This document shows positions 4,527 through 55,625 of a DNA stretch of 64,000 nt, one piece after another (the first letter of the stretch is position 1; every line of letters starts with the position of its first letter). Below the pieces are notes generated by a model that saw only the letters and a list, made by a program, of their open reading frames with translations, made no database searches and was not told the origin of the DNA. The DNA is taken from sequence record MK250019.1, one strand, 5' to 3'. Made by a program: the position numbers and the translations under genes.

Positions 4527-4600
4527 ATAATAATTAAAATGTATTTTATTATTTATTTTTAGATAATAATTCATGAAATATTTTTTTAATTAAAATATTA

Positions 4601-4612
4601 TATGTATCTTTG
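4601..4612 (+). promoter_or_regulatory. Bacteroidetes sigma70-type -7 promoter element (TAnnTTTG)
   Basis: TATGTATCTTTG, identical core at 9080, 11562 and 12665, each at the start of a + strand unit. Confidence 0.75.
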
Positions 4613-5546: not shown

Positions 5547-7616
5547 ATGAAGAATTTTATTTTGTGTTTGCTCATTTCATTTGTGAGCGTTTTTAATTCT
5601 TATGCAGACACTGTAACAGATACATTGACTGCATTGAAGTTGAAGGAAGTTACCGTAACTTCTTTGTATCGAAATAATGTACAGACTGGTAGTATGATTA
5701 ATACATCTTCTATTAAGATGATGAATCATGGTCAGGGTACAGATTATGTACTTTCTACATTGCCTAATATTTATGCATATAATGATAATGGTACGCAAAT
5801 GGGTTATTGTTATTTCCGTATGCGTGGTATGGGTCAGGAACGTATGAATGTTACATTGGATGGAATGCCTTGGAATGAAGCTGAAGATTTTGGTTGTTAT
5901 TTCAGTAATTCTCCTGATCTTATGTCTAGTTTGCATTCTATTAAGGTAGAAAAAGGTGCATCAGTAACTAATAACGGTACAGCTGCATATGCTGGTAATG
6001 TTTCTCTGGAATCAGTAGATTTGAGAAAAGATACAGATTCATGGTTTGATATTGGTTATGGTTCATTTAATTCATCACGTGTAAGTGGCGTTTATAATAT
6101 GGGATTGAAGAACCATTGGGGATTGCATGTTCGTGCAACATCACAGCAAACTGATGGCTATAAGGAAAATACATATAATAATTCAAAGTCAATTACACTT
6201 AAGACTGGTTATTTCTTTAATGATAAGCATTCGCTTGATTTCTTGACAATGACTGGTTATCATCGTAATGGTCAAGGTTTTATGGGTCTTACAGAAGATA
6301 TGATTCCTAAGCATCCTACACCATTTAAGCAAATGAAGTCTGGTAATCGTCAGCAGGAAACAGATGATTTCTTGACAACTTATAATAGATTTCAATACAA
6401 GGGAATTCTATCAGATAAGGTATTCTTGTCATCATCATTGTATTGGCAACATCAGACAGGTAATTATCGTATTGGATGGGATGATCCTTCACGACCTACT
6501 GGAAGTGTATTGAATAATTATCATCTTAATTATAATCTTACAGGATTTAACACAGTAATTAAGTATTATCCAGCTAATAATCTTTCACTTACAACTGGAG
6601 TAAATGCATATGTTTATCATAGACGTCATAAGGGATATGATATTGCAAACTCTGATAGTATTATTACAGCATGGAAGAATCCAGGACTTACTCCTTATTA
6701 TGATAATGCAGGAACAAAACCAGATGTAAATGTATTTGCAAATGTAAAGTATCAACCAATTAATAAGTTTACTATTGATGCTGCACTTCAATATCGTTAT
6801 ACATCACTTCATTATCGTGTAAATACACCAGCTATTGGTATTAATGGTGATTCTGATTTCAATCATGACTGGAATTTTATGAATTACAGTTTTGGACTTA
6901 CATATGATATTGATAAGTATTCAAAGGTATATGCACGTTATGCAGTCACAAACCGTGAGCCTTCCAGAACTGATATGTTCGGAGGTGAATATCGTACAGA
7001 TGAATCTGAAATGAATACAAAGTCAGAGCGCGTACATGATGTTGAACTTGGTTATGAAATTCGTAATAATAAGATTAATTTCAATATTAACGGTTTTTAT
7101 ATGAATTTTAGTAATGAACTTGTTGCAACAGGTGAACTTTCATCAATGAATGGTCTTCCTCTCCATAAGCAGCATGATTCATATCGACTTGGTTTGGAAC
7201 TTGCGATGGATTATAATCCTGTTAATACATTGCATCTTATTGCAAATGCTTCATGGTCAGAGAATAAGTTGAAGAACATTAATGGAAAGGAAATGAATCA
7301 TACATTCTCACCATCATCTACATTGTTTGCTGAAGCAAATTATACAGTTAATAAGATTAAGTTCGGTGTAAATACAAATTTCCGTTCATCTATGTATATG
7401 GATATTTATAATAATCATCAGCTTAAGGAAAACCTTACACTTAATGCATATGTTAATGCACGAGTATCAAAGATTGTAGAACTTAGTTTGAATCTTAATA
7501 ATATTACGAATCGTTTGAATTTCTCTAACGGATCAGTTGATATTCCATCAGATACAGCATATTATTTGGTTGATTCACCATTTAATATGTTTGCGACAGC
7601 TAAGTTTCACTTTTAA
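5547..7616 (+). CDS. TonB-dependent outer-membrane receptor (vitamin-receptor-like)
   Basis: Signal peptide, TonB-box-like LKEVTVTS, plug motif MRGMGQERMNVTLDGMPWNE..IKVEKGA..G.VSL, beta-barrel pattern, C-terminal Phe (AKFHF). Confidence 0.9.
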   Translation: MKNFILCLLISFVSVFNSYADTVTDTLTALKLKEVTVTSLYRNNVQTGSMINTSSIKMMNHGQGTDYVLSTLPNIYAYNDNGTQMGYCYFRMRGMGQERMNVTLDGMPWNEAEDFGCYFSNSPDLMSSLHSIKVEKGASVTNNGTAAYAGNVSLESVDLRKDTDSWFDIGYGSFNSSRVSGVYNMGLKNHWGLHVRATSQQTDGYKENTYNNSKSITLKTGYFFNDKHSLDFLTMTGYHRNGQGFMGLTEDMIPKHPTPFKQMKSGNRQQETDDFLTTYNRFQYKGILSDKVFLSSSLYWQHQTGNYRIGWDDPSRPTGSVLNNYHLNYNLTGFNTVIKYYPANNLSLTTGVNAYVYHRRHKGYDIANSDSIITAWKNPGLTPYYDNAGTKPDVNVFANVKYQPINKFTIDAALQYRYTSLHYRVNTPAIGINGDSDFNHDWNFMNYSFGLTYDIDKYSKVYARYAVTNREPSRTDMFGGEYRTDESEMNTKSERVHDVELGYEIRNNKINFNINGFYMNFSNELVATGELSSMNGLPLHKQHDSYRLGLELAMDYNPVNTLHLIANASWSENKLKNINGKEMNHTFSPSSTLFAEANYTVNKIKFGVNTNFRSSMYMDIYNNHQLKENLTLNAYVNARVSKIVELSLNLNNITNRLNFSNGSVDIPSDTAYYLVDSPFNMFATAKFHF

Positions 7617-9027: not shown

Positions 9028-9066
9028 AATATCCATTAAGAAAAAAAACTTAGTGGATATTTTTTT
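9028..9066 (+). terminator. Intrinsic terminator
   Basis: AATATCCATTAAG/CTTAGTGGATATT stem plus T tract. Confidence 0.75.
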
Positions 9067-9079
9067 ATATAAAGAATTA

Positions 9080-9091
9080 TATGTATCTTTG
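9080..9091 (+). promoter_or_regulatory. Bacteroidetes-type -7 promoter element
   Basis: TATGTATCTTTG. Confidence 0.75.
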
Positions 9092-9127
9092 TATTGTAAT
9101 TAAATAACAATTTAAATAATAAAGAAT

Positions 9128-10135
9128 ATGAGTGAATTAATGTTTAAGAGTAAGAATGTAACACCACAGTTGAATACTTATGTTATTAAGGTAACAGGTA
9201 AGTATAATGATCATCTACCATGGGAAACAAATATTATTAATGTAGAGGCAGATCGCATGAATAATTTTGTGTTGTTATTTCTTGCATATGTTGGTAACAG
9301 AAATTGGCAGCATAAATGGAAGAATTCTACATTCGGCGAGAATTTTAAGAAGGGACCACTGCAGACATATCTAGGTGCTTTTACCGAAGATACACATTAT
9401 CCATGTATGGACCTTATGTGGAATGATGTTGTTTCAGTCAACATTAATTATGTTAATAATAACGGTACATACATTTTGTGTGAACTGCCTGATGTAGAAG
9501 AATTGTATGATACTGAGGAGGATTTCCTTAAGGAACTTAAGTCACAGTTTGATGAATTTAATAAGAATGATCCTCGTGATGTTTATGAAGATGAAGGAAT
9601 TGAGATTGTTGATTCATATGAGCTTGAGCTTGTAAGAAATGTTCTTCGTTCTACTGGTAAGTGGGATAATGATGAAATTGATAATCTGTTTTGGGTTGAT
9701 CGTGAGATTGGTTTTAGTTCATTGGTTGCACGTACTTCTACAGATGAAAATATTCTTAAAGTATGTAAGCAGGAACATGCTAAGAGTGCAACAGGTGTTG
9801 AGTATAATGGATTTAAACCAGAAACACTCGAAAAGATTAAGACCGCTATTAGTGGAACAAATCTTCCAGAGGAAACTAAGACATTTGTAATTGACATTTG
9901 TTCTAAGTATAATTCAAAGAATATGTTGAGTGAATCTGAGAAGGAAGATCTTAAGAATATCATGGAAACATATAATTTGGTAAATTATTCATATGGATGG
10001 ATTGGCCCAGATGGTTGGAGTGGTATTTACCTTGAGCATGTGATAGATCCAGAGATGATTGATTTCGATGATTATTCAGAGAATTCAGTTATTAAGTATG
10101 AGGGTGAAACATATATTATTCATGAAGGAGATTAA
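9128..10135 (+). CDS. Hypothetical protein
   Basis: 335-aa ORF with phage-typical codon use, no TAG. Confidence 0.75.
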   Translation: MSELMFKSKNVTPQLNTYVIKVTGKYNDHLPWETNIINVEADRMNNFVLLFLAYVGNRNWQHKWKNSTFGENFKKGPLQTYLGAFTEDTHYPCMDLMWNDVVSVNINYVNNNGTYILCELPDVEELYDTEEDFLKELKSQFDEFNKNDPRDVYEDEGIEIVDSYELELVRNVLRSTGKWDNDEIDNLFWVDREIGFSSLVARTSTDENILKVCKQEHAKSATGVEYNGFKPETLEKIKTAISGTNLPEETKTFVIDICSKYNSKNMLSESEKEDLKNIMETYNLVNYSYGWIGPDGWSGIYLEHVIDPEMIDFDDYSENSVIKYEGETYIIHEGD

Positions 10136-10138
10136 TTT

Positions 10139-10561
10139 ATGTTAATTATTCTATCAATAGTATTAATTATTGTAGGATTATTTCTTGGAATTTTAATAGG
10201 TACTTTAGGATCATTTGGTGATTCTGAAATACCTATTAAAGAAGATAAAATAATCAAGAGATGTTTGTTATTTAATATAGCATCTCGGTGTGATAAAATT
10301 ATACTTGTATGTTGTACACCATTCGGATGGTTAGGAATTCTTTTATTATTTGTATGTTGTTTTGTATTTCAACATATTATAGGAATTATGTTTATTAGTC
10401 CTTTACCTATGATGGAATTTCTTAATACATTTGAAGACAAAATATATAGTTTTGCACTACTATATTTAGTACCTATGTTTGGTGGTTATTTTATAGGTTA
10501 TAATTATATGAATAATTTTATTAAACGAATAGAAAAAGAAGAACATGAAGAAAGGAACTAA
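10139..10561 (+). CDS. Hypothetical multi-pass membrane protein
   Basis: 140 aa, three to four hydrophobic segments. Confidence 0.65.
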   Translation: MLIILSIVLIIVGLFLGILIGTLGSFGDSEIPIKEDKIIKRCLLFNIASRCDKIILVCCTPFGWLGILLLFVCCFVFQHIIGIMFISPLPMMEFLNTFEDKIYSFALLYLVPMFGGYFIGYNYMNNFIKRIEKEEHEERN

Positions 10562-11039
10562 ATTTTATGTTATATTAGGTTATAATACAGAAACAGAAGC
10601 CTGGTATGGATATGTAGAAAATTCTTTTTCTATGGGTGCAGATAAAAATAGAATTAGAACATTTTCTACATGTAGAGCAGATTATCCTTGGAAAGATAGA
10701 TCATTTTCAGAGAGAAAACGAATAGCGAAAGCATATTTGAAGAAACATGGTTATAGATGTAATTATGCTCGTGATTATATTATAGATGCAAAGATGAATC
10801 CTAATTCACCAAATCAATGGATTTATTTTTATTTGCGAGATATTGTAGACAATCTTAATAAAAAACATTATAATAATTGTTATTGGAAAGTATATAGAGT
10901 AAATTCTAAGTTTTGTCCTATTAATGTAAATATGAATGAATATTACAAAACATTAGTAAATAAGAAATTTAGGAAGTCTCTTGACAAATTTCAATTAAGA
11001 AATCAAGAATTTTCTGTAAAGGAAGTTTCAAAAGATTAA
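10545..11039 (+). CDS. Hypothetical basic protein
   Basis: 164-aa ORF overlapping upstream stop. Confidence 0.65.
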   Translation: MKKGTKFYVILGYNTETEAWYGYVENSFSMGADKNRIRTFSTCRADYPWKDRSFSERKRIAKAYLKKHGYRCNYARDYIIDAKMNPNSPNQWIYFYLRDIVDNLNKKHYNNCYWKVYRVNSKFCPINVNMNEYYKTLVNKKFRKSLDKFQLRNQEFSVKEVSKD

Positions 11040-11047
11040 AAATATAT

Positions 11048-11300
11048 CGGTACGGCTCTAAAGGAGAGAGCATCATTTATGATTAATGATGACGAAGATT
11101 TGTTCGTAAGTTAATCTTTACTAAGAGAATATACAATATTTAGTTATATAGAAGTAATTTAATTGTTATAATGCGAATACAATTTTATATGAAACTATAT
11201 ATGTCATTTATGAGATTATAGTGAAGAATAGCATTTACAGTAACTATAATAAGATGATATAAACAATATAACTTCTGTGGTTCGATTCCACACGTACTGA
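11048..11300 (+). ncRNA. tRNA-like RNA with about 190-nt structured insert
   Basis: Acceptor CGGTACG/CGTACTG+A, D-like hairpin GCTC..GAGC, stem CATCATT/AATGATG, canonical T arm TGTGG-TTCGATT-CCACA at 11276-11292. Confidence 0.6.
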
Positions 11301-11319
11301 CTAATAAACATATAACATT

Positions 11320-11538
11320 ATGAAAGAAGAAATTAAATTCTTAGGTAAAACACCAAGAGAAATTGCAGAACGTTACTTCAATAAATCATATGAAGGTAAA
11401 GAACGATATGATATTTTAGTTGAAGGCTTTATTGAGGGATTTAATTATCTATTTCCTCATTATGATATAGCTAATACTTTGGTTGAAACATTTGAACGAA
11501 TTAAAGAATTAGAAAATAAAGATAAAAAAGATTCATAA
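11320..11538 (+). CDS. Hypothetical protein
   Basis: 72-aa ORF, TAA stop. Confidence 0.6.
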   Translation: MKEEIKFLGKTPREIAERYFNKSYEGKERYDILVEGFIEGFNYLFPHYDIANTLVETFERIKELENKDKKDS

Positions 11539-11561
11539 TTATTTTTTTATTTGAAATAAAA

Positions 11562-11573
11562 TATGTATCTTTG
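11562..11573 (+). promoter_or_regulatory. Bacteroidetes-type -7 promoter driving a non-coding unit
   Basis: TATGTATCTTTG followed by about 1 kb with no credible + strand ORF. Confidence 0.7.
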
Positions 11574-11593
11574 TATTGTAAATAATGAACACC

Positions 11594-12086
11594 TATAAGT
11601 GTTAAGTAACATAAGGATGGAAATCTTATGGTTCGTAAGTAGTAATATCGAATAGTCCGCATAATAGGAACATGTCATTATTTTAACATTTATATAAGAA
11701 TATACTACATGTCTTATATGAGCGTCAGGAGTATTGTAACAGAGTCGACGTATTTACATTTTTAGAGGCGCAGTTTTTAAATCTGACTATTCTACGTAAA
11801 GTAGTGTTCTATGTAAAGTAGTGAAGTGCAAGATACGGCGTCAGTACAAGTCTATATAATAAGTTGCAAATAAAAATAGAAACTGTTAAAATTCGTATCT
11901 AATTTGTCTGTATTTCACAATGGTTAATGAGGTACATGAAAAGTGATTTGGAAGAATCATTATAAACATATTATGATTAAGATAACGTTCAACTAAGCTA
12001 TATAATAATAGTAAGTACAGCGCTGAAAATATATGTTTATATGTATTGCGGTTGTGGTTCGATTCCACATACAGACACGACTTATA
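11594..12086 (+). ncRNA. Large structured ncRNA candidate (about 490 nt)
   Basis: Closing stem TATAAGT/ACTTATA, GGAA-capped hairpin, long-range AATAGTC/GACTATT and AGATACG/CGTATCT helices, embedded tRNA-like domain. Confidence 0.5.
11906..12077 (+). ncRNA. tRNA-like domain with expanded anticodon loop
   Basis: Perfect acceptor GTCTGTA/TACAGAC+A, D loop AATGGTTAA, TACAT/ATGTA stem enclosing about 110 nt with 10-bp ATAAACATAT/ATATGTTTAT helix, T arm identical to the 11048 element. Confidence 0.6.
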
Positions 12087-12299
12087 TTAATGATGAAAAG
12101 TCTGCAATTAACAAAATATAAAAACATCTTAATGTACTGTTGATTATATGTTTTAATTTTGTTAACTAAGAGATTCTTGTAAATTATAAAAATTTACAAA
12201 TCGAGGGGAACGCATAACGGCAATTATGTTAGTACTTGGCGTTTAATGAAATGAATATGTATATTTGCCGATGTGCATATGAGTGACATTAAATGATAA

Positions 12300-12394
12300 A
12301 ATTATAATAGTGTAGCGGTTCGCACGCCCGTTGGTAAAACGGGAAGGGTTTATGTTTGAAAGCATATTAGGGGTTCGACTCCCGCTTATAAACA
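12300..12394 (+). tRNA. Degenerate tRNA-Tyr(GTA)-like gene
   Basis: D loop AGCGGTT, stem CCCGT/ACGGG with loop TG-GTA-AA (G33), long variable arm, T loop GGTTCGACTCC; acceptor only 5 bp and bulged T stem. Confidence 0.5.
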
Positions 12395-12401
12395 ATTAAA
12401 T

Positions 12402-12550
12402 TACATAATGTTCTCACGAAGAGCGAGCATCGGAAGGTGAGCAATTTAGAAAGATGTTTAAGAGTGATCATATTAAATTGATTTCTAACAGAAATACGGT
12501 GACGTAGGAGCTGAAAAAGAACAAACGTATGGTAATGTTAGCATTATGTA
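12402..12550 (+). ncRNA. Structured RNA candidate (about 150 nt)
   Basis: 11-bp closing stem TACATAATGTT/AGCATTATGTA; GNRA hairpins CATC-GGAA-GGTG and ACG-GTGA-CGT. Confidence 0.45.
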
Positions 12551-12616
12551 TTTAAAAAATATTAGTCCTCACAGACTTTACATTTTTTATAACTTTAAAA
12601 TTTTGAATTTAATATT

Positions 12617-12651
12617 AAATCCGATGCTTGTAATAAGTATCGGATTTTTTT
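12617..12651 (+). terminator. Intrinsic terminator closing the non-coding unit
   Basis: AAATCCGATGCTT/AAGTATCGGATTT stem plus T tract. Confidence 0.8.
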
Positions 12652-12664
12652 AATTCATAAAAAA

Positions 12665-12676
12665 TATGTATCTTTG
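12665..12676 (+). promoter_or_regulatory. Bacteroidetes-type -7 promoter element
   Basis: TATGTATCTTTG upstream of nadR. Confidence 0.75.
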
Positions 12677-12706
12677 TAATATATTAAATAATAATTAAAT
12701 AATTAA

Positions 12707-13867
12707 ATGATTAAGAATATAGGAATTTGTTTTGGCGGTTATTGTCCTATGCATCAGGGACATCTTGATCTTATAATGAAAGCAAAGAAAGAAAATGATA
12801 TTTGTTATGTGGTTGTTTGTGGTTATACAGATGAACCACGAGGTAATGAATTAGGTCTTAATATTAATAATAGAAAAAGACTTATTAAAGAGTTTTTTAA
12901 AAATGATGAACTTATTCGAGTTCTTACTGTAAATGATACAGAATTAGGTATTGATGAAAGTATGTCTGAACATAATTGGAAAGTATGGACAGATTATGTA
13001 AAATATCAAATTACAGATGATCTTTTGGGTGGAGGTCCGACATTTCCATTTAGTCCTGATGAAAGGATTGAAGCGCATGAATTGAAACTTACATTCTATG
13101 TTGGTGAAAAGTTCTATGTTGAATCATTGAATAAATTAAATATTAATGCAGTGTTAGTTGGTTACGATGAGAATTCTCCATCTAATAGAAGTAATGATAT
13201 ATCAGCAACATATATTAGACAAAATCCTCAATATTATTGGGATAAGATTGTATCAACATTTAAACCTGCATTAACAAAGAAAATTCTTGTATTAGGTACA
13301 GCATCAGAAGGGAAATCAACACTTGTTAAAGATATTGGTAATTATTTTAATATACCATATACAACAGAATTCGGTAGGGATTATATGGAGAAACATTGTA
13401 TGTTAGATCCTGATATTACTGTAAATGATTTTGTTGAATTCCTTATTGGACAGAGACAATATTATTTTGATGCTTTGAATGATAAAGGAAATAAGGGCGT
13501 TATCATTTCAGATACTGATAATCTCGTTACACTTATGTATGCAAAAGCATATGTATCTGATAATAATATGCAAATTACTGAAGATGAATATAACAATATA
13601 TTGAAACCACTTGCAAAATCATTACAAACAGGTGTTTCATGGGATGTAATTTATCTTATCAAACCGCATAATAAATTTGTTGATGATGGAACACGTTACA
13701 TGAATCAATCTTCAATAGATGAGAGAATGAAGAATTATAAAATTCTTTTATCATTACTTGAAGAGTTCGGTTTACTTGATAAAGTAATTGAATTGAATGG
13801 TTCTTATATGGATCATTTTAATTATGTTAAGGATTATATCACAAAATTATATGATAAAGAAAATTAA
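12707..13867 (+). CDS. nadR: NadR-like bifunctional NMN adenylyltransferase / ribosylnicotinamide kinase
   Basis: N-terminal FGGYCPMHQGH (HxGH), ISATYIR, P-loop GTASEGKST, EFGRDY, SDTD, FVDDGTR. Confidence 0.9.
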   Translation: MIKNIGICFGGYCPMHQGHLDLIMKAKKENDICYVVVCGYTDEPRGNELGLNINNRKRLIKEFFKNDELIRVLTVNDTELGIDESMSEHNWKVWTDYVKYQITDDLLGGGPTFPFSPDERIEAHELKLTFYVGEKFYVESLNKLNINAVLVGYDENSPSNRSNDISATYIRQNPQYYWDKIVSTFKPALTKKILVLGTASEGKSTLVKDIGNYFNIPYTTEFGRDYMEKHCMLDPDITVNDFVEFLIGQRQYYFDALNDKGNKGVIISDTDNLVTLMYAKAYVSDNNMQITEDEYNNILKPLAKSLQTGVSWDVIYLIKPHNKFVDDGTRYMNQSSIDERMKNYKILLSLLEEFGLLDKVIELNGSYMDHFNYVKDYITKLYDKEN

Positions 13868-14516
13868 TAATATATTATATTCAGAGTTTATAGAAGGAAG
13901 AAATATTAATGAACATTTGTTTATGCTCATTGGTATTTTCCTTCAATTAATTGCATGGTATATAACTAAAGATTCATTGATTTCTTTAATATCAGGTGTA
14001 ACTGGTATTATATCTGTTATATTATGTTCACAAAGAAAGATTTCATTTTATTTCTTCGGCTTTATACAATTAGGAACATATATGTATCTTGCATGGCAGC
14101 AAAGATTTTATGGTGAATTAATAGAGAATATATTTTACATTATTACTATGTTAATAGGTATTGTAGTATGGTTAAAAAATTATAATACTGAAGAACAAAT
14201 AGTAGAATCTAAAAGACTTTCTGATAGGTTATTCTATATAATATGTAGTATAATGGTGTTTATCTGTGTATTATTTGGTTATTATATGAAATACTTTACA
14301 GATAATACACAACCATTTATGGATTCATTTTCAACAGTACCTGCATTTATAGCACAGACATTGTTAATGTTACGATATAGAGAACAATGGATATTCTGGA
14401 TTATAATTGATGTTGTTTCTATATTCATGTGGATGTTTGCTGATAATTGGATAATGGTTATTCAATTTATATTTTGGACAATGAATTGCATATATGGTTA
14501 TAGAAAATGGAAATAA
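13851..14516 (+). CDS. pnuC: PnuC-family nicotinamide riboside transporter
   Basis: Multi-TM protein, PFMDSFSTV..AQTLLMLRYREQWIFWIIIDVV motif, overlaps nadR stop. Confidence 0.9.
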   Translation: MIKKINNILYSEFIEGRNINEHLFMLIGIFLQLIAWYITKDSLISLISGVTGIISVILCSQRKISFYFFGFIQLGTYMYLAWQQRFYGELIENIFYIITMLIGIVVWLKNYNTEEQIVESKRLSDRLFYIICSIMVFICVLFGYYMKYFTDNTQPFMDSFSTVPAFIAQTLLMLRYREQWIFWIIIDVVSIFMWMFADNWIMVIQFIFWTMNCIYGYRKWK

Positions 14517-14531
14517 TAAAAATAAAATAAT

Positions 14532-14777
14532 ATGACATTTGTTATTATAGTAATAGTTATTTGCTTAACTGTATATGGTATTATGGCATCTAAACATAAT
14601 GCAGAAGAAAGTAAAGCATTTTGGGGTGATCATTCAGATTCATCTGATGTTAAGAAATTAAAGTCAAGAATGAAACTTTTGATTGATAGAGTAGATTTAC
14701 TTGAGGAACGAATTAATAAGTTAGATGGACAGAGTTTAAAATCAAGAATTGATAGAAAAACATTTAATAGCAATTAA
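14532..14777 (+). CDS. Small membrane-anchored coiled-coil protein
   Basis: N-terminal TM, 81 aa. Confidence 0.6.
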   Translation: MTFVIIVIVICLTVYGIMASKHNAEESKAFWGDHSDSSDVKKLKSRMKLLIDRVDLLEERINKLDGQSLKSRIDRKTFNSN

Positions 14778-14780
14778 TAT

Positions 14781-15248
14781 ATGAAAGCAGAAAGAACAAA
14801 TTTTGAAGTTTTTGATTGGATGAAAGAACATCAAAAAGAGTATAATTATAGTGATGAATTTATTAATGCATATAAGGACTGTTATTTTTTGAAACGTCTC
14901 GAAGGAAAAGTATTTAAAGGTGAATTTTGTGGATATAAAGTAACACCTGATAATTCAGATAAATCTTATTTTGTAGAAGAAGGAATTAGAGGATGTGAAC
15001 GAGGATTTTTTACTGTACTTGATAATAAACTTATTAAACTTGAATTTGATTCAGTACAGGATGAATTGTGGTTTAGTAATAAGTATAAGAAAAATGAGAA
15101 TTCAATTATAGAAAAGTATATCAATCCTAAATTGAAATATCTTACAGAATTCTTGAAACTTGAAACACTTACAGATAATGAAAGAATGATGATTAATGAT
15201 CATATTCAATCATTAGAGTTTATTATTAATTCACTTTATAAAATTTAA
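14781..15248 (+). CDS. Hypothetical protein
   Basis: 155-aa ORF in operon. Confidence 0.65.
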   Translation: MKAERTNFEVFDWMKEHQKEYNYSDEFINAYKDCYFLKRLEGKVFKGEFCGYKVTPDNSDKSYFVEEGIRGCERGFFTVLDNKLIKLEFDSVQDELWFSNKYKKNENSIIEKYINPKLKYLTEFLKLETLTDNERMMINDHIQSLEFIINSLYKI

Positions 15249-16287: not shown

Positions 16288-17337
16288 ATGAATAAACAAA
16301 TCAAGCAATTGTTAGAAAATTTATTTGATGATTATGATGACTTAATATAGGATGATAATGATAATATTGAAAAAGATTCCATAGGTAAGAAAATAACTGA
16401 TGAAGATATAAAGAAAAAAGTAAAAGAATGGTTGCGTTATAATATTGCATCAAGTCCAGAAAATAATAATATAGATAGAAATCTTACTTTTGAATATATT
16501 GATGACATACTTTATTGTAATTTACATTTTAATGGTTATATGACAGTATTTATGAGTGAAATACCTGATTATGTAAAGATTAATAAAATTACATGTAAAG
16601 ATATTAAATTTAATAGTTTATATAATTTACCGAAGGAAATAGATGGAGATATGCTTATAGATGGTTATAATCATACGAAATTAATTGGTAATTTCCCCGA
16701 AAAAATAGGTTGTTTAAAGATATGGAATTCAAAAATAAAATCATTGGAAGGACTCAATGATAATTGTGGTTCTATTGAATCATTAGAGATTGAGGCATGC
16801 AATAATTTCCAATATTTTATGGGTATTCCAGAAAATGTAGGACGTGTTTCTATACAAGAATGTAATAAACTTCAAAATTTAATAGGATTACCAGAATCTG
16901 TTGATGATATAGAGTTAACAGATTTAAGGAAATTTTCAAGTTTAGAAGGATGTCCAAAAGAGTTAAAAGGAGATTTACGTATAACAGATTGTAAAAAATT
17001 ATTATCATTAAAATATATTTCATCTTTAATCATAGGAGATTGTTCTGTTACGTATACAGGTATAGAACATCTTGATATGGCTGAATCAAATACAAGAGTT
17101 ATAGGAGACTTTAATGTTTCTAATAATAAGTTAGTTGATTTAAGTAATGGACCAGAAGATGTAAGAGGTAATTATGATTGTGCATATAACTCAAAATTGA
17201 CATGTTTAAATGCGCAAGATACACTTATGTCTGGATATAAGAAAACATTTGATTGTACGAAAAATCGAAGACTAAAAACATTATAGGGATTACCTATAAT
17301 GATTAAAGGAGATATAATAGTAAATACAGATTTATAA
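16288..17337 (+). CDS. Leucine-rich-repeat-like protein, paralog 1 (349 aa, TAG=Gln)
   Basis: MNKQIKQLLENLFDDYDD leader; repeats of the type SLEGCPKEL and NLIGLPESV; TAA at 17335. Confidence 0.8.
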
Positions 17338-32874: not shown

Positions 32875-34491
32875 TTGGATATATTAAAGAAGAAAACTTC
32901 TTTTTTAGATGAACATAATCCTTCTAATTCGGAACGTGTATATTGCTGGTATAATAATATAACAGAAATTCAGAAATGCCCTCATTGCGGTAAATCCAGA
33001 AAATTTCATAAATTTACATATGGATATTTTCCTACATGTGGTTCAAAAGAATGTCGTGCAAAATCCGTTGTATATGGAAATAAGTTTAATCATAATTTTG
33101 TAGAAATACAAAAGAAAATGAGAGAAACATATGCAAAAAACCATAATGGTTATACGCATAATATGCAAGATCCAGAATTTAAAAAGAAGTTTTTTGATGA
33201 GTTTAAAAAGAAACATAATGGTATATCATGTGGTGCTCAGACAGAATTAGCAAAACAAAACAGAGAGAAAACAACATTAGAAAAATATGGTTGTAAATAT
33301 GCTTTATCATCTAAAGATGTAAGAGATAAAATATATGAAAAATATGGTGATGATGCAAAAATTAAATTTGCAAAAATCGCTACTGATACACGGAAAGAAA
33401 ATACATTAAATAACATTATTAAAAAGATTGAAGAATTAAATTATACATATATTTCAAATAATAATAATTTATTTAAAATTAAATGTAATAAATGTGGACA
33501 TATAAATGAAATTACAAGACAAGCAATAAACTATTACTATAGGAATAGTAATCATATATATTGTAATAAGTGTGAATATAAAGAATTAACATATAGGAGT
33601 AATTTTGAAAAAGATGTTGTTAAAGAAATAGGAAATATTATAAAAGAAACTAACTATTCTATTATAACAAATAAACATATTTATAATGGTAAAGAACATT
33701 TTGAAGTTGATATATTGATTCCTGAATTAAATTTAGCAATAGACTGNNNNNNNNNNNNNNNNNNNNNNNNNNNNNNNNNNNNNNNNNNNNNNNNNNNNNN
33801 NNNNNNNNNNNNNNNNNNNNNNNNNNNNNNNNNNNNNNNNNNNNNNNNNNNNNNNNNNNNNNNNNATGATATTTATAAGAAAGACATTATATTAAGTCGT
33901 TTATCTAGTAAATTAAAATTAAATAAACATATATATGCAAGAAAATGTTTAATTAAAGAATTGACTCCTAAATTATATAGAGATTTCTGTAATGAAAATC
34001 ATTTACATGGATCTGTTAATGCTTCAATAAAAGTAGGATTATTTTTTAATGATGAGTTAGTTGAAGTCGTAGGTTTAGGGAAATCTCGTAAATTAATTGG
34101 TAATAATAAAGATGAAGTTTCATATGAATTATTACGTTTATGTACAAAGAAATATATTAACGTTATAGGTGGGTTTTCTAAATTAATGAATTATGTTATT
34201 AATAAGTTTAATATAAATTCCATATATAGTTATGCAGATTTATCATGGATAGATTTAAAAGGAACATCATACATTAATAGTGGATTTTATATAGATAAAG
34301 TTATTGATAATGAATATTGGTGGGTTGTAAACAATATAAGAGAGAATCGATTGAATTATACAAAGAGTAAATTGGTATCATTAGGGTATGATAAGCATTT
34401 AACAGAAATTGAAATAATGCATTCTTTAAAGTATTATAGAATATTTGGTCCTGGAAATTTAAAATTTATATATAAAAAGAAAAGTCTCTAA
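32875..34491 (+). CDS. Hef-like homing endonuclease (zinc finger + PD-(D/E)xK-type domain)
   Basis: CPHCGK module, TLEKYG repeat, EVDILIPELNLAI, ARKC..NENHLHG, YELLRLC..VIGGFSKL; antisense to the capsid gene; spans an N gap. Confidence 0.7.
   Translation: MDILKKKTSFLDEHNPSNSERVYCWYNNITEIQKCPHCGKSRKFHKFTYGYFPTCGSKECRAKSVVYGNKFNHNFVEIQKKMRETYAKNHNGYTHNMQDPEFKKKFFDEFKKKHNGISCGAQTELAKQNREKTTLEKYGCKYALSSKDVRDKIYEKYGDDAKIKFAKIATDTRKENTLNNIIKKIEELNYTYISNNNNLFKIKCNKCGHINEITRQAINYYYRNSNHIYCNKCEYKELTYRSNFEKDVVKEIGNIIKETNYSIITNKHIYNGKEHFEVDILIPELNLAIDXXXXXXXXXXXXXXXXXXXXXXXXXXXXXXXXXXXXXXXXXDIYKKDIILSRLSSKLKLNKHIYARKCLIKELTPKLYRDFCNENHLHGSVNASIKVGLFFNDELVEVVGLGKSRKLIGNNKDEVSYELLRLCTKKYINVIGGFSKLMNYVINKFNINSIYSYADLSWIDLKGTSYINSGFYIDKVIDNEYWWVVNNIRENRLNYTKSKLVSLGYDKHLTEIEIMHSLKYYRIFGPGNLKFIYKKKSL
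33747..33865. other. Assembly gap (N run)
   Basis: 119 N characters. Confidence 1.
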
Positions 34492-50900: not shown

Positions 50901-53885
50901 TGGATTCCATGTATAACGATAATCAGTTCCATTTATATTATCACTAATAAATTCATATTTTATAGATTTAGTTATTTCTCGTTTTAATAAGTCATCATTT
51001 TTATTTACTTTAAATGTAATTTTTAAATATGATGAATCATTAAACGTTTCTTCTCCTGCATTTTCAAACGCATTATTATCAATAGTTATATCACTAATAT
51101 TTACAAAACCTTGAAAATGTGTTTTATCTAAATCTATATATGTTTTGTAACTATTACCGTAAATATAATTAGCATCATCTGGTAACACTATCATAAATAC
51201 AGTTCTATAATATAAAGTTACCGGATAACCTGTTGCTGGTATTCCTTTATCAGTAGTACCTATTTTTAATATACTTTTATTATCGTTATATGATGAATCG
51301 TTATCAGATCTATATTGAATATATGTACCGTTTAATGTATTTTTATTATCTGGTGTTGCTTTAATTTCAGGCTTATAAATATTTAATTTTTTGTAAATAT
51401 ATAAATTGGTATTTATAGTACTATAACCCTACTTATACATAAACGCATATATTACCACACCCGGACATATATATCTTAGTATTGTAATTTTACCTCTATA
51501 TGTATAATCTTCTTTATTATATGTTGGATTTTCATCCGCATATGGCTATACATCAACCTAATTAGCTACACTAATTGAAAACTCTTTTACCTAAAATTTT
51601 GATAAATCTATTTTTTTAAGTGAGCCATCATCTTTATTAATTTCGCATACATAACATTTATAATAAAGTATATTATTAATAAATGGTGATATATATAATT
51701 TTTTTGGTTTATACTCTAATAAAGTTGAATAGCTACTGTCTTTGTATAATTCTACATATATCTATAAATATAGTTGTTTAATATCATAATAATTTGTTGA
51801 ATCATGATATTTTATTTTAATACGAAATATAATATCTTTAATAGTAGTTATATCATCTCCATCCATTTTCTATGGATCAACTTTTATAATAGACTATGAT
51901 TTATTAAGTAATTTTCTATTACCTTGTATCACATGTATATAACCTGGTGTATTATCATTAGTTGTATATGTAAAATATACATTATCAACTGATGTTTCTA
52001 AATGTTTATCTAAATAACCATCTTTAATAATACCTACACTTATTACTTCAAATCTATCTTCACCTAATGCTGATACATAATTTGATCTTGGTCTGATTTC
52101 ACATGCATATACTACTGATTTCTATGTTACAACATGAGAAACTGTTTTTGAATTATATTTTACTGTAAATGTTAAACGTCTATCTACATTTTTATCATAT
52201 ATATTTTTACATCTTATATTACTTGCAACTACATAATTAATATTTTCATATGTTATAATTTCATATTGTATATCTAATAAATTAACATCATCATTATCAC
52301 ATGTAATTGTATATAAATTTACATCTTCTATTGTAATTCCTTTTTCGTTATCAAACGCTCTAAATGCTAAAATTATATTATTATATTCTGGTATACCTCC
52401 AATTTTTTCTGTACATTCATCTTGTTTAATTGCCAAATCAATAGAAAGTATGTCCTATGTTAATTTACATGAAGCTTGTAGAATATCAAGATTATTATCC
52501 ATATTAAAATTTATAGTCTTTGTAATAGAAGCACGTTCATTTCTATCAAAATTAATATCTAATATATATTCATCACCATTTAATGTAACATTATTATATA
52601 ATACACTGTCAACTAATGCATTTATTGTATATGTCGTAGAAATATTATTTTTTATATTTGTAACATTTGTAATCTTTACAGAATTCTTTTTATCAATCTC
52701 TATTATACCATAATAATGCAATCTTATTGTTTCACCAAATGCAGAAACATTATATGTTCCATTAGTAGAAGGAGTTTCTGCTGTATTTCTATCTAAATAT
52801 TCTACGTAATACTATAATTTTATACTTGATTTATCTTGAATTATTTGTTTTACTGTACTTTTTAATTTATTAGAACCATTATCATATACTACGTTAACAT
52901 ATAAATATCTTTGCTCACTTGTATAATTTTCATCTACATTTATAGTGGTTTTAAATTCACCATCAACATATATAGTTTTAATTACACTATAATTAATCTA
53001 ATTCTATGTATTACTATATGAAAACTCTAACTATAAATTATCTTTAACTTCTTTTGACTTAACATTAATACCATCTGTATATGTACATTTATATGTTAAT
53101 ATTCTATTATCACCATTAAAAATTACAGGATTCGGTTTATCTATATCTAACGTAATAGTATATGTATTAACATTCTATATTATTGATTTTTGTTGATTAA
53201 CTTCATTATATTGAGTTTTAAATATTGCTTCAAATTCTAACGTCTTCTAACTACTTATATTCTCATCTATTAAATATACTAATTCTACTGTATTGTCAGA
53301 TGAATTAATTTTTAATGACTTTATTTTATTTTTATCTAATAAATTACCATTTAAATTTAATGTTACATTAGACTAATTTCTTTTATTTAATACTGCCCAA
53401 TATTTTATATGGATTTCCTGTTCATCACCAGATATTACACCTCCATCTTTATTTAAATGTCCATTCTACACTTCTGTAGGAATAAACTCCAAATGAACTT
53501 CAATATTTTCTTTTGGGGCCTATGAAACTTTTGCATATATATGATTTATAGGTGTTAAACTCTATACATTATTACGTACAGCAAATTCCATTACATCTTT
53601 ACGTAATTTTTCTGTTGTATTATCACTAATAGATGTAATGATTAATTTATTGTAATATTTTAAAGCCTCATTTGTTTCGCTATCTTTTTCACCTTCTTTT
53701 ATAAATTTATACCCTGTAATCCAATCAGGTTTATATATACAATTAATATCTGATGTAATAGGTATATAATTCCATTCTAATACAGCATAATAACCTGTAT
53801 TAGTCTCATTAAATTTATCTGCAGGTAATAACGGTAATATAATAGTATCTGATAAAATTTTATGAAATTTATTATTGCTCATCAT
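47916..53885 (-). CDS. Very large tail fibre / baseplate-associated protein with Ig/BACON-like repeats (1989 aa, many TAG)
   Basis: Five track ORFs share one frame; sampled lines contain only TAG stops; C-terminal WSNGGCDLDT..DNQHGCGYESI motif. Confidence 0.7.
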
Positions 53886-53909: not shown

Positions 53910-55625
53910 TTAAATAAATCCATGGAATATAAAATCACCATAAATTGATCTAGTTGTTGGTCCCCATGTTGTCAATATAGCGACAACAAACCAAATATTT
54001 GTTAATTTTAATCGTTCATAACTAGGTAAGAAATCACCTCCAATGACAATAGTCCATTCTAATAATCTTACTAACTTTTCTATAGCAGGTGAATTCTGAT
54101 CACTCAATGCTAACCGTATATCAAATAAATCAGGATCCATTAAATATTCTGGTGTTGTAATAGGAGGAAATGACTTTCTAACTATTTCATTTATTTTCTT
54201 AAAATCTACATTCTATAAAGCAGACTTTGCACCAATATCAAGTTTAAATTGGCACTTACTCATATCAAATGCTATATTCATAACACCCATTCCCCAAAAT
54301 GGTTTACCTAACTATCCGGCTTTATATACAGTTGGATCAGTTTTATAAAAAGGGCAAATTGCCATATTAGACTTTGCAGTAAAGAAGAAACCATATTCCT
54401 ATGGACCTATATAGAATGGTCCACTTACATTTATAATTGCATTATATGCAACAGCTAATGCTTTTTCCAAAGCTTCCTTTGCTAATTGTACTGCTCTAAT
54501 AATCTGATTAATAACTGCAAATAACGGTGCTAATTTCTTATCTACCGTACCGAATTTAATACGTCTTAGTAATTTTATAATCAACTCATTTTTTTTTATT
54601 AGAAGTAAATTAATTATCTTTTTTAACTCTATAAATACAAGGTTTACTTTTGCTGTTACATAATCTCTATATTCTTTTGGCATAGTTGCAGTACCAGCTA
54701 AAATATCTGGAACTTTCTATACTACATTTAATACAAGATTAAAATAATCTAAAATATTTTTAATTTTATCTATTATTTCTGGTGTTTCTGTTCTATATTC
54801 ACCTTTTAGTGTTTCTGTAATTTTTATAAGTAAATCTTTTCCTGCACATGTAAGTGAACAATAACCGTTTCCTGGCATAAAATCAATATGTTTACCACAA
54901 ACAGGGCATGTTCCACCTTTTGTAAGATAATGTCCAAACTGATCGACTGCAGACGCTAATCCTATTGCAGCATCTAATGTATTTTTACTTGTTCTAGTTC
55001 CATCTTCATCTTCTGTTACAGTATTTGTAACATTCTTAACTATATCTTCATCTTCTGCATTTTGTACAGAAGAAGCTGCTAATGTTGTTACATCCTATAA
55101 TGCAACTGTATCTTTTATCTGTTGATTAACATCTGTTCCTTTTCCTTGATGATATTCATTATCCTATACAGAAACACCATACATATCTTCTTCTATGATA
55201 TTAGACTCATCAAATAATGATGCTCCTGTATATTCCTCTAGATCTTCTTCTGATTGTTCAGTATGTCCAGTTGTATTTACAAATTCTTCATTATTATCTT
55301 CTTGTTCTTCTAACTATTTCTGTGTAAAAGAATTAATATATTCTTCTGTTTCGACACCAGATTTATTTTTTAATCTTTCACCAGTTGTTAAATTTTTAAT
55401 ACTATATACCCGTTCAACATCAATCAGATTATTAGTTACATTTCCATCTTTATCTACTTCATAATAAACATACCATGTTACTCGTATTTCATTTCTTGGA
55501 TCTCCTACATAATATGTTTTATATCTTAAAGATTCAATATAATATTTTTTATTCTCATCATACTAAAGATCATCGTCATCATAGTTATAATATATAACAC
55601 CAGTTTTAGATGTAATTGTTTCCAT
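53910..55625 (-). CDS. Hypothetical structural-region protein (571 aa, TAG=Gln)
   Basis: ATG 55625 (METITSKTG); joins ORFs 54399-54683 and 53910-54140; CPVCGK motif. Confidence 0.65.

What the first reader, a model, noticed from the sequence alone, without database searches (positions are those of the whole stretch)
11562..12651. Dedicated non-coding transcription unit of about 1.05 kb packed with RNA structure
Seen: a host-type promoter (11566-11573) and a strong terminator (12617-12651) bracket DNA with no credible + strand ORF. It contains successive structured blocks: 11594-12086, a long hairpin at 12108-12166, hairpins at 12178-12245, a tRNA-like gene at 12300-12394 and a multibranch RNA at 12402-12550. 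Established: large phage-associated ncRNAs (GOLLD, ROOL) occur beside tRNAs. Inference: an early ncRNA operon of unknown function.
Basis: partly seen in the sequence, partly recalled or inferred. Interest (0 to 1): 0.78.

Follow-up and report, generated by a model that had tools for sequence, protein, structure and literature searches.

The report
Lak phage operon of structured RNAs
A giant gut phage (Lak-A2, which infects Prevotella) carries a 1.05 kb gene-free transcription unit encoding two tRNA look-alikes and three conserved, previously undescribed folded RNAs of unknown function.

Summary
The window is Prevotella phage Lak-A2. A Bacteroidetes-type promoter (-7 box TAtcTTTG, 11566-11573) and an intrinsic terminator (12617-12647 plus T-run) bracket about 1.05 kb with no credible ORF under table 11, TAG=Q or TGA=W.

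The unit is conserved from end to end in five Lak lineages that are 70-88% identical. Compensatory base changes support these parts:
- RNA-1a (11593-11900)
- a tRNA-like module with no conserved anticodon (11906-12078)
- R3, a two-hairpin kissing-loop RNA (12212-12295)
- an aberrant tRNA-Tyr-like gene (12301-12393; G33, A1·A72 mismatch, missed by Rfam's tRNA model)
- RNA-5, a multibranch RNA (12402-12549)

The hairpins between them keep their shape but not their sequence, or are lost in some lineages. Nothing matches Rfam, including GOLLD, ROOL, tmRNA, group I introns and riboswitches. No copies turned up outside Lak phages.

Contigs from a pig-gut metatranscriptome lie on the unit and on one promoter-linked gene, but hardly on the flanks. 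That fits transcription without proving it.

Best reading: a polycistronic tRNA-linked stable-RNA operon, probably cut at the tRNA-like modules by host tRNA-processing enzymes. What the RNAs do is unknown. The original Lak paper noted highly expressed large intergenic regions but did not dissect them.

The parts
11541..11583 (+). Promoter block; -7 box TAtcTTTG at 11566-11573
   Evidence: Matches the Bacteroidetes -7 consensus TAnnTTTG (own knowledge). The block recurs 4-5 times in the window, mostly ahead of genes, and is invariant across lineages. RNA-library contigs break at its edges, as expected for a repeat.
11593..11900 (+). RNA-1a: multi-helix structured RNA of about 310 nt
   Evidence: fold_alignment gives 59 pairs, 21 with two-sided compensatory changes. 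97.6% of cells pair, against 30-43% when slid. The hairpin at 11612-11632 is deleted in L020, so it is dispensable. Long invariant single-stranded stretches are present.
11906..12078 (+). tRNA-like module 1: 7-bp acceptor stem, D-like arm, T arm with GGTTCGATTCC loop; the anticodon loop is replaced by a variable insert
   Evidence: Acceptor stem: 4 of 7 pairs compensatory. T stem: 3 of 5 compensatory. A 7-8 bp 'anticodon' helix is kept. The insert is about 100 nt in lineage A and about 30 nt in B-like lineages. ARAGORN calls the orthologs Ile, Ser or nothing. No Rfam tRNA hit.
12079..12102 (+). Small conserved hairpin just 3' of the tRNA-like module
   Evidence: The stem is GACU/AGUC in lineage A and UCCU/AGGA in B-like lineages, which is compensatory. 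The loop is conserved. Folds in all five lineages.
12108..12165 (+). Long imperfect hairpin; shape conserved, sequence not
   Evidence: Predicted at the same place in A2, B2, L020 and L022 with unrelated sequence; absent in L021.
12177..12199 (+). Short hairpin, lineage-restricted spacer
   Evidence: Present in A and B; deleted in L020, L021 and L022.
12212..12295 (+). R3: two hairpins inside an outer helix, with a kissing-loop pseudoknot (GGCA 12219-12222 with UGCC 12266-12269)
   Evidence: 27 pairs, 8 with two-sided changes. 98.9% of cells pair, against 36-41% when slid. The kissing loop covaries (G-C to U-A). Single copy in Lak-A1 and Lak-B2.
12301..12393 (+). Aberrant class-II tRNA-Tyr-like gene (anticodon GUA; AUA in B2, B3 and L020)
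   Evidence: Called by ARAGORN. Anticodon stem: 3 of 5 pairs compensatory; the variable arm covaries. G33 and the A1·A72 mismatch are invariant, and the T stem has only 3-4 pairs. Not found by Rfam's tRNA model and not in the published Lak tRNA table.
12402..12549 (+). RNA-5: multibranch structured RNA of about 150 nt
   Evidence: 31 pairs, 11 compensatory. On the model-fitted alignment, 99.6% of cells pair against 32-55% when slid; covariation score 0.375 against 0.18 in shuffles, reached by 0 of 500 shuffles. Single copy in two Lak genomes. Not found in 154 Bacteroidales genomes.
12617..12654 (+). Intrinsic terminator
   Evidence: 14-bp stem plus T-run. Lak-B2 has a terminator of different sequence at the same position.
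11048..11300 (+). RNA-0, outside the finding: a sister RNA of about 250 nt closed by a tRNA-like acceptor stem and the same T arm
   Evidence: 40 pairs, 12 compensatory. 92.9% of cells pair, against 33-52% when slid. The acceptor stem covaries between lineages (CGGUACG/CGUACUG versus CAGUAUA/UAUACUG).

Best explanation
This is a polycistronic operon of stable RNAs in a Lak megaphage. Host RNA polymerase starts at a Bacteroidetes-type promoter (about 11580) and stops at an intrinsic terminator (about 12650). The roughly 1.07 kb transcript carries, in order:
- RNA-1a
- a tRNA-like module without an anticodon
- variable hairpins
- the kissing-loop RNA R3
- an aberrant tRNA-Tyr-like RNA
- the multibranch RNA-5

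I infer that the two acceptor/T-arm modules act as punctuation. Host RNase P would cut at their 5' sides, and RNase Z or exonucleases (then possibly the CCA-adding enzyme) would act at their 3' sides. That would release four or five discrete stable RNAs, as in the phage T4 tRNA cluster with its two extra stable RNAs.

The tRNA-Tyr-like RNA plausibly helps decode the very frequent UAU codon, and its unusual G33 loop might escape host tRNA-cutting defences. RNA-1a, R3 and RNA-5 are trans-acting folded RNAs whose partners are unknown.

Shown here: absence of coding, conservation, RNA-level structure on the + strand, promoter and terminator. Suggested: transcription. Inferred: processing and function.
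For: - Non-coding under three genetic codes, with no ORF shared between lineages.
- The whole unit is collinear in five Lak lineages at 70-88% identity.
- Compensatory changes occur in every conserved module. Many G·U pairs would be C·A mismatches on the other strand, so the + strand RNA is the selected molecule.
- The promoter block is repeated, mostly ahead of genes. The terminator is conserved in place but not in sequence.
- In pig-gut metatranscriptome run X20, contigs lie on 11562-12563 and on 9198-10182 (the gene behind another copy of the promoter), with little or nothing on 10183-11561 and 12564-14900.
- TAT makes up 5.6% of codons and outnumbers TAC 16 to 1. The wobble base of the Tyr-like RNA switches between G and A across lineages while the rest of the loop stays invariant.
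- Precedents: tRNA-like 't-elements' define RNA ends through RNase P and RNase Z (PMC1920247). Phage tRNAs counter tRNA-targeting defences, including one that depletes tRNA-Tyr (PMC10264068, PMC11555353).
Against: - No RNA ends were mapped. The RNA-library evidence comes from contigs, which cannot show strand, ends or abundance, and three of the four runs cover coding and non-coding DNA alike, so DNA carry-over cannot be excluded.
- Processing at the tRNA-like modules is an inference from shape alone.
- G33, the A1·A72 mismatch and a 3-4 bp T stem may make the Tyr-like RNA a poor or non-functional decoder.
- Only five lineages, effectively two deep clades, underlie the covariation counts, and shuffle controls are inflated by shared ancestry.
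- More distant Lak-like phages (nadR 63-65% identical) lack the unit next to nadR, so it is not universal.
Confidence: 0.7

Rival explanations
1. The unit is one large ornate RNA of about 1 kb that works unprocessed, like GOLLD or ROOL. The tRNA-like modules would be structural domains rather than cleavage signals.
For: All modules keep the same order and spacing in five lineages, and total length is nearly constant at about 1157 nt. Large phage RNAs next to tRNAs are known, and GOLLD and ROOL form multimeric assemblies (bioRxiv 10.1101/2024.12.08.627333).
Against: The segments between modules are deleted or replaced in some lineages (12104-12207 is absent in L021). No long-range pairing between modules was detected. 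Each module closes on itself. No Rfam hit to GOLLD or ROOL.
Confidence: 0.15
2. It is a decaying tRNA cluster: degenerate tRNA pseudogenes and spacer with no present function.
For: There are two aberrant tRNA-like elements. The published Lak annotation lists many 'pseudo' and 'undetermined' tRNAs. Hairpins are gained and lost between lineages.
Against: RNA-1a, R3 and RNA-5 are not tRNA-shaped, yet they keep 98-99.6% of pairs through many compensatory changes and hold long invariant stretches at 70% overall identity. The promoter and terminator are maintained.
Confidence: 0.06
3. It is a cis-regulatory leader, such as an NAD-related riboswitch, controlling the downstream nadR-pnuC genes.
For: nadR (12707-13867) and pnuC (13797-14516) follow directly. 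A terminator follows RNA-5.
Against: A full copy of the promoter block lies between the terminator and nadR. Lak-B has an extra ORF between the unit and nadR. Lak-like phages with nadR-pnuC but without the unit exist. No riboswitch family matches. The terminator lies 65 nt beyond RNA-5 and shares no sequence with it.
Confidence: 0.04
4. It encodes small proteins, or is a DNA-level element such as an origin or packaging site.
For: Short ORFs of 25-50 codons exist in each lineage. The region is AT-rich.
Against: ORF positions and frames are not shared. Indels are mostly not multiples of three. G·U-containing covarying helices point to selection on the RNA of one strand.
Confidence: 0.03

Closest known systems
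Phage T4 tRNA gene cluster with stable RNAs 'species 1 and 2' (rnaC, rnaD); from my own knowledge, not re-checked here
   Same: Phage-encoded and non-coding. tRNAs are co-transcribed with extra small stable RNAs of unknown function, and host RNase P and 3' processing release them.
   Different: Here only one module looks like a decoding tRNA, and it is aberrant. The extra RNAs are larger (about 85, 150 and 310 nt) and unrelated in sequence. One module is a tRNA scaffold whose anticodon loop is replaced by a variable insert.
GOLLD and ROOL large ornate RNAs (Rfam; bioRxiv 10.1101/2024.12.08.627333; PMC5737381)
   Same: Large, highly structured phage- or prophage-associated RNAs of unknown function, often next to tRNA genes.
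   Different: No sequence or structure match. This unit is modular with self-closed domains. It has been found only in Lak phages.
tRNA-like processing signals: plant mitochondrial t-elements (PMC1920247); also mascRNA on MALAT1 and gammaherpesvirus tRNA-miRNA units (own knowledge)
   Same: Acceptor/T-arm mimics embedded in longer transcripts, recognised by RNase P and RNase Z to define RNA ends.
   Different: Those are eukaryotic or organellar. No cleavage has been shown for the Lak modules.
tmRNA and bacterial Y RNA (YrlA) tRNA-like domains (PMC4201824)
   Same: An acceptor/T-arm module with the anticodon arm replaced by another RNA domain. RNA-0 and tRNA-like module 1 have this topology.
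   Different: No tag ORF is conserved, and no G3·U70. ARAGORN's tmRNA search and the Rfam models are negative. No Ro/Rsr gene was found among the ten neighbouring ORFs scanned, plus nadR and pnuC.
Lak 'highly expressed large intergenic regions' and 'enigmatic tRNA introns' (Devoto et al. 2019, PMC6784885; bioRxiv 10.1101/356790)
   Same: Same phage family. The paper notes ORF-free regions of up to about 1.5 kb that are highly expressed. Its tRNA 'introns' contain T-arm plus acceptor-like minihelices resembling the modules here.
   Different: The paper does not dissect any such region. Its tRNA table has no entry at this locus (A1 29-31 kb), and its intron-bearing tRNAs lie at 492-500 kb.

Membership tests
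GOLLD / ROOL (Rfam) | Match to the family covariance model | tested here: not met
   cmscan of the window at gathering thresholds gave 0 hits. cmscan of 11400-12800 at E<=10 gave no GOLLD or ROOL hit.
Canonical tRNA | Cloverleaf with a 7-nt anticodon loop, U33, a 5-bp T stem and a paired 1-72; detected by tRNA models | tested here: not met
   12301-12393 has a cloverleaf with covariation, but G33, A1·A72 and a 3-4 bp T stem. ARAGORN calls it; the Rfam tRNA model does not. 11906-12078 has no conserved anticodon loop.
tmRNA | tRNA-like domain plus a conserved tag reading frame and pseudoknots | tested here: not met
   ARAGORN -m found none. Rfam's tmRNA model aligns only to the 11-13 nt T loops. 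The candidate mini-ORF in RNA-0 is interrupted by TGA in Lak-B2 (read).
Group I intron in a tRNA | Match to the Intron_gpI model, with a conserved P3-P9 core inserted in an anticodon loop | tested here: not met
   No Rfam hit at E<=10. ARAGORN's intron model with a 5' half at 11655 is contradicted by Lak-B, where that acceptor pairing fails.
Riboswitch / cis leader of nadR-pnuC | Aptamer in the 5' UTR of the regulated gene, with an overlapping expression platform | tested here: not met
   A separate promoter copy lies between the terminator and nadR. No riboswitch model matches. The unit is absent upstream of nadR in L016 and L017.
Phage tRNA-linked stable-RNA operon (T4 type) | One promoter and one terminator, no ORF, and tRNA(-like) genes interleaved with other conserved RNAs | tested here: met
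Phage tRNA-linked stable-RNA operon (T4 type) | Primary transcript cut by RNase P and 3' processing enzymes into discrete stable RNAs | not testable with these tools
   Only contigs of RNA libraries were available. They cannot show RNA ends.
Structured ncRNA in general | Base pairs maintained by compensatory substitutions beyond control levels | tested here: met
   R3. RNA-5. RNA-1a. tRNA-like modules.

The most novel reading that the evidence does not exclude
Lak megaphages use acceptor/T-arm 'minihelix' frames as a general device. Arbitrary RNA domains (RNA-0, the insert of tRNA-like module 1, and the published tRNA 'introns') would be framed by tRNA ends, so that host RNase P, RNase Z and CCA-adding enzyme mature and stabilise them. 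The framed and neighbouring RNAs (RNA-1a, R3, RNA-5) would be new classes of functional RNA that take over host translation or act as decoys for tRNA-targeting defences. The invariant G33 loops (UGGUAAA; UGGAAGA) would be nuclease-resistant anticodon-loop mimics.
Probability: 0.2. Interest if true: 0.85.

Novelty: new variant of a known kind. Interest (0 to 1): 0.6.

Why it matters
Lak phages are among the largest phages of the human and animal gut, and almost nothing is known about how they take over Prevotella. [quoted passage not shown]

This analysis turns one such region into defined parts: three new structured RNA families with covariation support, plus two tRNA mimics. It also shows a recurring design, with RNA domains framed by tRNA acceptor/T-arm ends. 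That gives concrete molecules for end-mapping, RNase P/Z assays, structure determination and pull-downs. It also gives candidates for the growing field of phage tRNAs that counter tRNA-cleaving defences.

If the RNAs prove to be processing by-products or simple decoders, the finding is a useful annotation but not a surprise.

Tried and rejected
- Alternative genetic codes (TAG=Q, TGA=W, TAA read through) gave no credible ORF.
- Rfam at gathering thresholds and at E<=10 gave only noise: CRISPR-DR50, IS009, snoRNAs, a Lysine fragment and tmRNA T-loops.
- ARAGORN intron models: the 327-nt-intron 'tRNA-Stop(tta)' is refuted by Lak-B. The 100-nt-intron 'tRNA-Ile(tat)' correctly finds the acceptor and T arm, but the anticodon is not conserved.
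- A tmRNA-like tag ORF in RNA-0 is not conserved.
- A long-range GAAUAGUC/GACUAUUC pairing in RNA-1a has no covariation and is broken in L020 (alignment).
- Motif scans: viral contigs returned only Lak contigs plus chance hits L011-L014, which are GC-rich or coding. Metagenome contigs returned only two Lak-B contigs. Genome contigs returned none.
- Covariance models of RNA-5 and R3 found no paralogues in the Lak-A1 and Lak-B2 genomes. The RNA-5 model found nothing in 154 sampled Bacteroidales genomes. That search had no positive control among bacteria, so it is weak evidence.
- More distant Lak-like nadR loci (L016-L019) lack the unit.
- Neighbouring proteins gave no RNA-related function: a TonB-receptor-like protein, NadR, PnuC and unknowns.
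- RNA runs X15-X17 cover genes and the unit alike, so they say nothing about transcription.

Full report
**Identity of the window**

The 1141 bases at 11540-12680 are 100% identical to Prevotella phage Lak-A2 (MK250019.1, 488839-489979). They are 96% identical to Lak-A1 and Lak-C1 and about 74% to the nine Lak-B genomes. No whole genome is held for the window.

**Checking the observation**

The region 11562-12651 has no + strand ORF longer than 36 codons with a start codon. The longest stop-free stretch on the + strand is 54-55 codons under table 11, TAG=Q (the code Lak uses) or TGA=W.

It lies in a block of about 43-50 nt that recurs at 4579-4612, 9058-9109, 12644-12692 and 54591-54621, mostly just upstream of genes.

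The terminator (12617-12647 plus T-run) is one of three terminator-like sites found in 3 kb, where 0.5 are expected. In Lak-B2 a hairpin plus T-run of unrelated sequence sits at the same place. That is good evidence the terminator function is under selection.

**Relatives**

I collected the unit from five lineages:
- the A/C group (window, L001, L002, L005, L006; 95.6-98.8% identical to each other)
- Lak-B (L003, L004, L008-L010, L024, L025)
- three Logan contigs, found through the neighbouring NadR protein (L020, L021, L022)

The B-like lineages are 85-89% identical to each other and about 70% identical to A. The unit is collinear throughout, and its length is nearly constant at about 1157 nt in A and B.

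Exact-motif scans of IMG/VR, JGI metagenomes and 185,579 prokaryote genomes returned only Lak contigs or obvious chance hits. Lak-like phages whose NadR is only 63-65% identical do not have the unit next to nadR.

**Anatomy**

The alignment shows alternating blocks: near-invariant stretches, covarying helices and freely varying spacers.

- **RNA-1a (11593-11900).** It has 59 predicted pairs, 21 with changes on both sides. 97.6% of alignment cells pair, against 30-43% when the 3' partners are slid by 1-3 columns. One hairpin (11612-11632) is deleted in L020.
- **tRNA-like module 1 (11906-12078).** It follows RNA-1a after 5 nt. It has a 7-bp acceptor stem (GUCUGUA/UACAGAC in A; GGUUAUG/CAUAACC in B-like; 4 of 7 pairs compensatory) and a T arm with the canonical GGTTCGAnTCC loop (3 of 5 stem pairs compensatory). 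It also has a D-like arm and a 7-8 bp 'anticodon' helix kept through G·U and compensatory changes. Where the anticodon loop should be, there is an insert of about 100 nt in A and about 30 nt in B-like lineages. The inserts share only the motif UGGAAGA. ARAGORN calls the orthologs Ile(gat), Ser(tga) or nothing, so no anticodon is conserved.
- **Small hairpin (12079-12102).** It follows directly and has a covarying stem and a conserved loop.
- **Long hairpin (12108-12165).** Its shape is kept in four lineages and its sequence is not. It is absent in L021.
- **Short hairpin (12177-12199).** It occurs only in A and B.
- **R3 (12212-12295).** It consists of two hairpins inside an outer helix, with a kissing-loop pseudoknot whose G-C pair becomes U-A in Lak-B. 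Of 27 pairs, 8 show two-sided changes. 98.9% of cells pair, against 36-41% when slid.
- **tRNA-Tyr-like gene (12301-12393).** The cloverleaf is kept, with compensatory changes in the anticodon stem and the long variable arm. However, G33 (normally U), an A1·A72 mismatch and a T stem of only 3-4 pairs are invariant. The wobble base is G in three lineages and A in the other two. Rfam's tRNA model does not report it even at E<=10. The published Lak tRNA table has no entry at this locus.
- **RNA-5 (12402-12549).** It has 31 pairs, 11 of them compensatory. On a model-fitted alignment, 99.6% of cells pair, against 32-55% when slid. The covariation score is 0.375, against 0.18 in shuffles, and 0 of 500 shuffles reach it.

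Many helices contain G·U pairs, which would be C·A mismatches on the other strand. The + strand RNA is therefore the selected molecule.

Covariance models of RNA-5 and R3 find one copy each in the complete Lak-A1 and Lak-B2 genomes. The RNA-5 model finds none in 154 sampled Bacteroidales genomes.

**A sister element**

Just upstream, at 11048-11300, lies another conserved RNA of about 250 nt, which I call RNA-0. Its ends form a covarying 7-bp acceptor stem next to the same T arm, and its interior has 12 compensatory pairs out of 40. In B-like lineages it abuts the promoter block. In lineage A a 72-codon ORF (11320-11538) lies between them.

**Transcription**

Only contigs of RNA libraries could be laid on the window. 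Three runs cover coding and non-coding DNA alike, so they are uninformative.

The pig-gut metatranscriptome X20 is patchy. Its contigs lie on 9198-10182 (the gene behind another copy of the promoter block) and on 11562-12563. Little or nothing lies on 10183-11561 or 12564-14900. That pattern fits RNA rather than DNA carry-over, but it cannot show ends, strand or level.

[quoted passage not shown] They do not say which.

**How it most likely works**

Shown: a promoter-to-terminator unit that is non-coding and under selection for RNA structure on the + strand. Suggested: that it is transcribed.

Inferred: the two acceptor/T-arm modules are recognised by host RNase P and by 3' tRNA-processing enzymes, which cut the transcript into discrete stable RNAs. 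Precedents are the T4 tRNA cluster (own knowledge) and tRNA-like t-elements (PMC1920247).

The Tyr-like RNA may really decode. TAT is 5.6% of all codons in the window's ORFs and outnumbers TAC 16 to 1, and the G/A switch at the wobble base keeps tyrosine identity. Its invariant G33 could be an anticodon-loop change that escapes tRNA-cutting defences, a strategy proposed for phage tRNAs (PMC10264068; for tRNA-Tyr, PMC11555353). This last point is speculation.

What RNA-1a, R3 and RNA-5 do is unknown. Their long invariant unpaired stretches suggest tertiary contacts or binding sites.

**Rivals**

- A single unprocessed ornate RNA is possible. The deletable spacers and self-closed modules argue against it.
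- A decaying tRNA array is contradicted by the covariation in modules that are not tRNA-shaped.
- A leader or riboswitch for nadR-pnuC is contradicted by the intervening promoter, the extra ORF in Lak-B, and phages with nadR-pnuC that lack the unit.
- Small proteins or DNA-level elements are contradicted by the lack of shared frames and by G·U-containing helices.

**Novelty**

The kind, a phage tRNA-linked stable-RNA operon, is known. The existence of highly expressed Lak intergenic regions is published. New here:
- the dissection into five covariation-supported modules
- three RNA folds with no match to any Rfam family
- the tRNA scaffold whose anticodon loop is replaced by an insert
- the recurrence of tRNA-end 'frames'

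The 'introns' listed in the paper's Table S6 also contain T-arm plus acceptor-like minihelices.

Noticed in passing
window 11048-11300: RNA-0: a conserved structured RNA of about 250 nt, closed by a covarying tRNA-like acceptor stem and the T arm CUGUGGUUCGAUUCCACA. It lies directly after the gene ending at 11039 and has no promoter block of its own.
   Followed up: partly
window 11320-11538: A 72-codon ORF is present only in the A/C lineages. In B-like lineages RNA-0 is followed directly by the promoter block. The ORF's last codons overlap the conserved AAAAAGATTCATAA sequence upstream of the promoter. No family match.
   Followed up: partly
window 4579-4612, 9058-9109, 11541-11583, 12644-12692, 54591-54621 (weaker at 51467-51487): A repeated promoter block with the TAtcTTTG -7 box, mostly in front of genes. 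Assembly contigs of RNA libraries break at its edges.
   Followed up: partly
window 11789-11822: A 17-nt tandem duplication inside RNA-1a. It is absent in Lak-A1 and partly absent in L005. It is seen as a 14-nt deletion in contigs of two RNA libraries.
   Followed up: no
Lak-A1 record MK250015.1, 492-500 kb (paper Table S6): The published 'enigmatic tRNA introns' of Lak (in Tyr, Phe and Thr tRNAs) themselves contain a GGTTCGAnTCC T arm flanked by an acceptor-like stem. They are mini tRNA-like frames like those in this unit.
   Followed up: no
Lak-A1 record: Of 27 GGTTCGAnTCC T-loop motifs in the genome, three (29247, 30008, 30323) form this isolated cluster, far from the main tRNA clusters. 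None of the three is in the published tRNA table.
   Followed up: partly
window-wide ORFs: Extreme codon bias: TAT 55.7 versus TAC 3.5 per 1000 codons, AAT 78 versus AAC 7, GAT 74 versus GAC 6. In-frame TAG occurs at 8.1 per 1000, consistent with TAG=Q recoding in some genes only.
   Followed up: no
window 5547-7616 and loci L016, L017: A phage-encoded protein with weak similarity to TonB-dependent receptors. It is conserved near nadR-pnuC in distant Lak-like phages too.
   Followed up: no
window 16288-17337: An ORF read with two TAG=Q codons has a weak partial match (about 23 bits, against a cut-off above 900) to EspK/GogB-family models over about 70-120 residues. This is far below family membership and probably reflects a shared repeat or domain only.
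   Followed up: no
L023 1-110: A B-like contig carries a tRNA-Tyr-like gene with the A-type anticodon stem and variable arm. This suggests recombination between lineages within the unit.
   Followed up: no
window 33747-33865: A run of 119 N (masked or a gap). It was left untouched.
   Followed up: no
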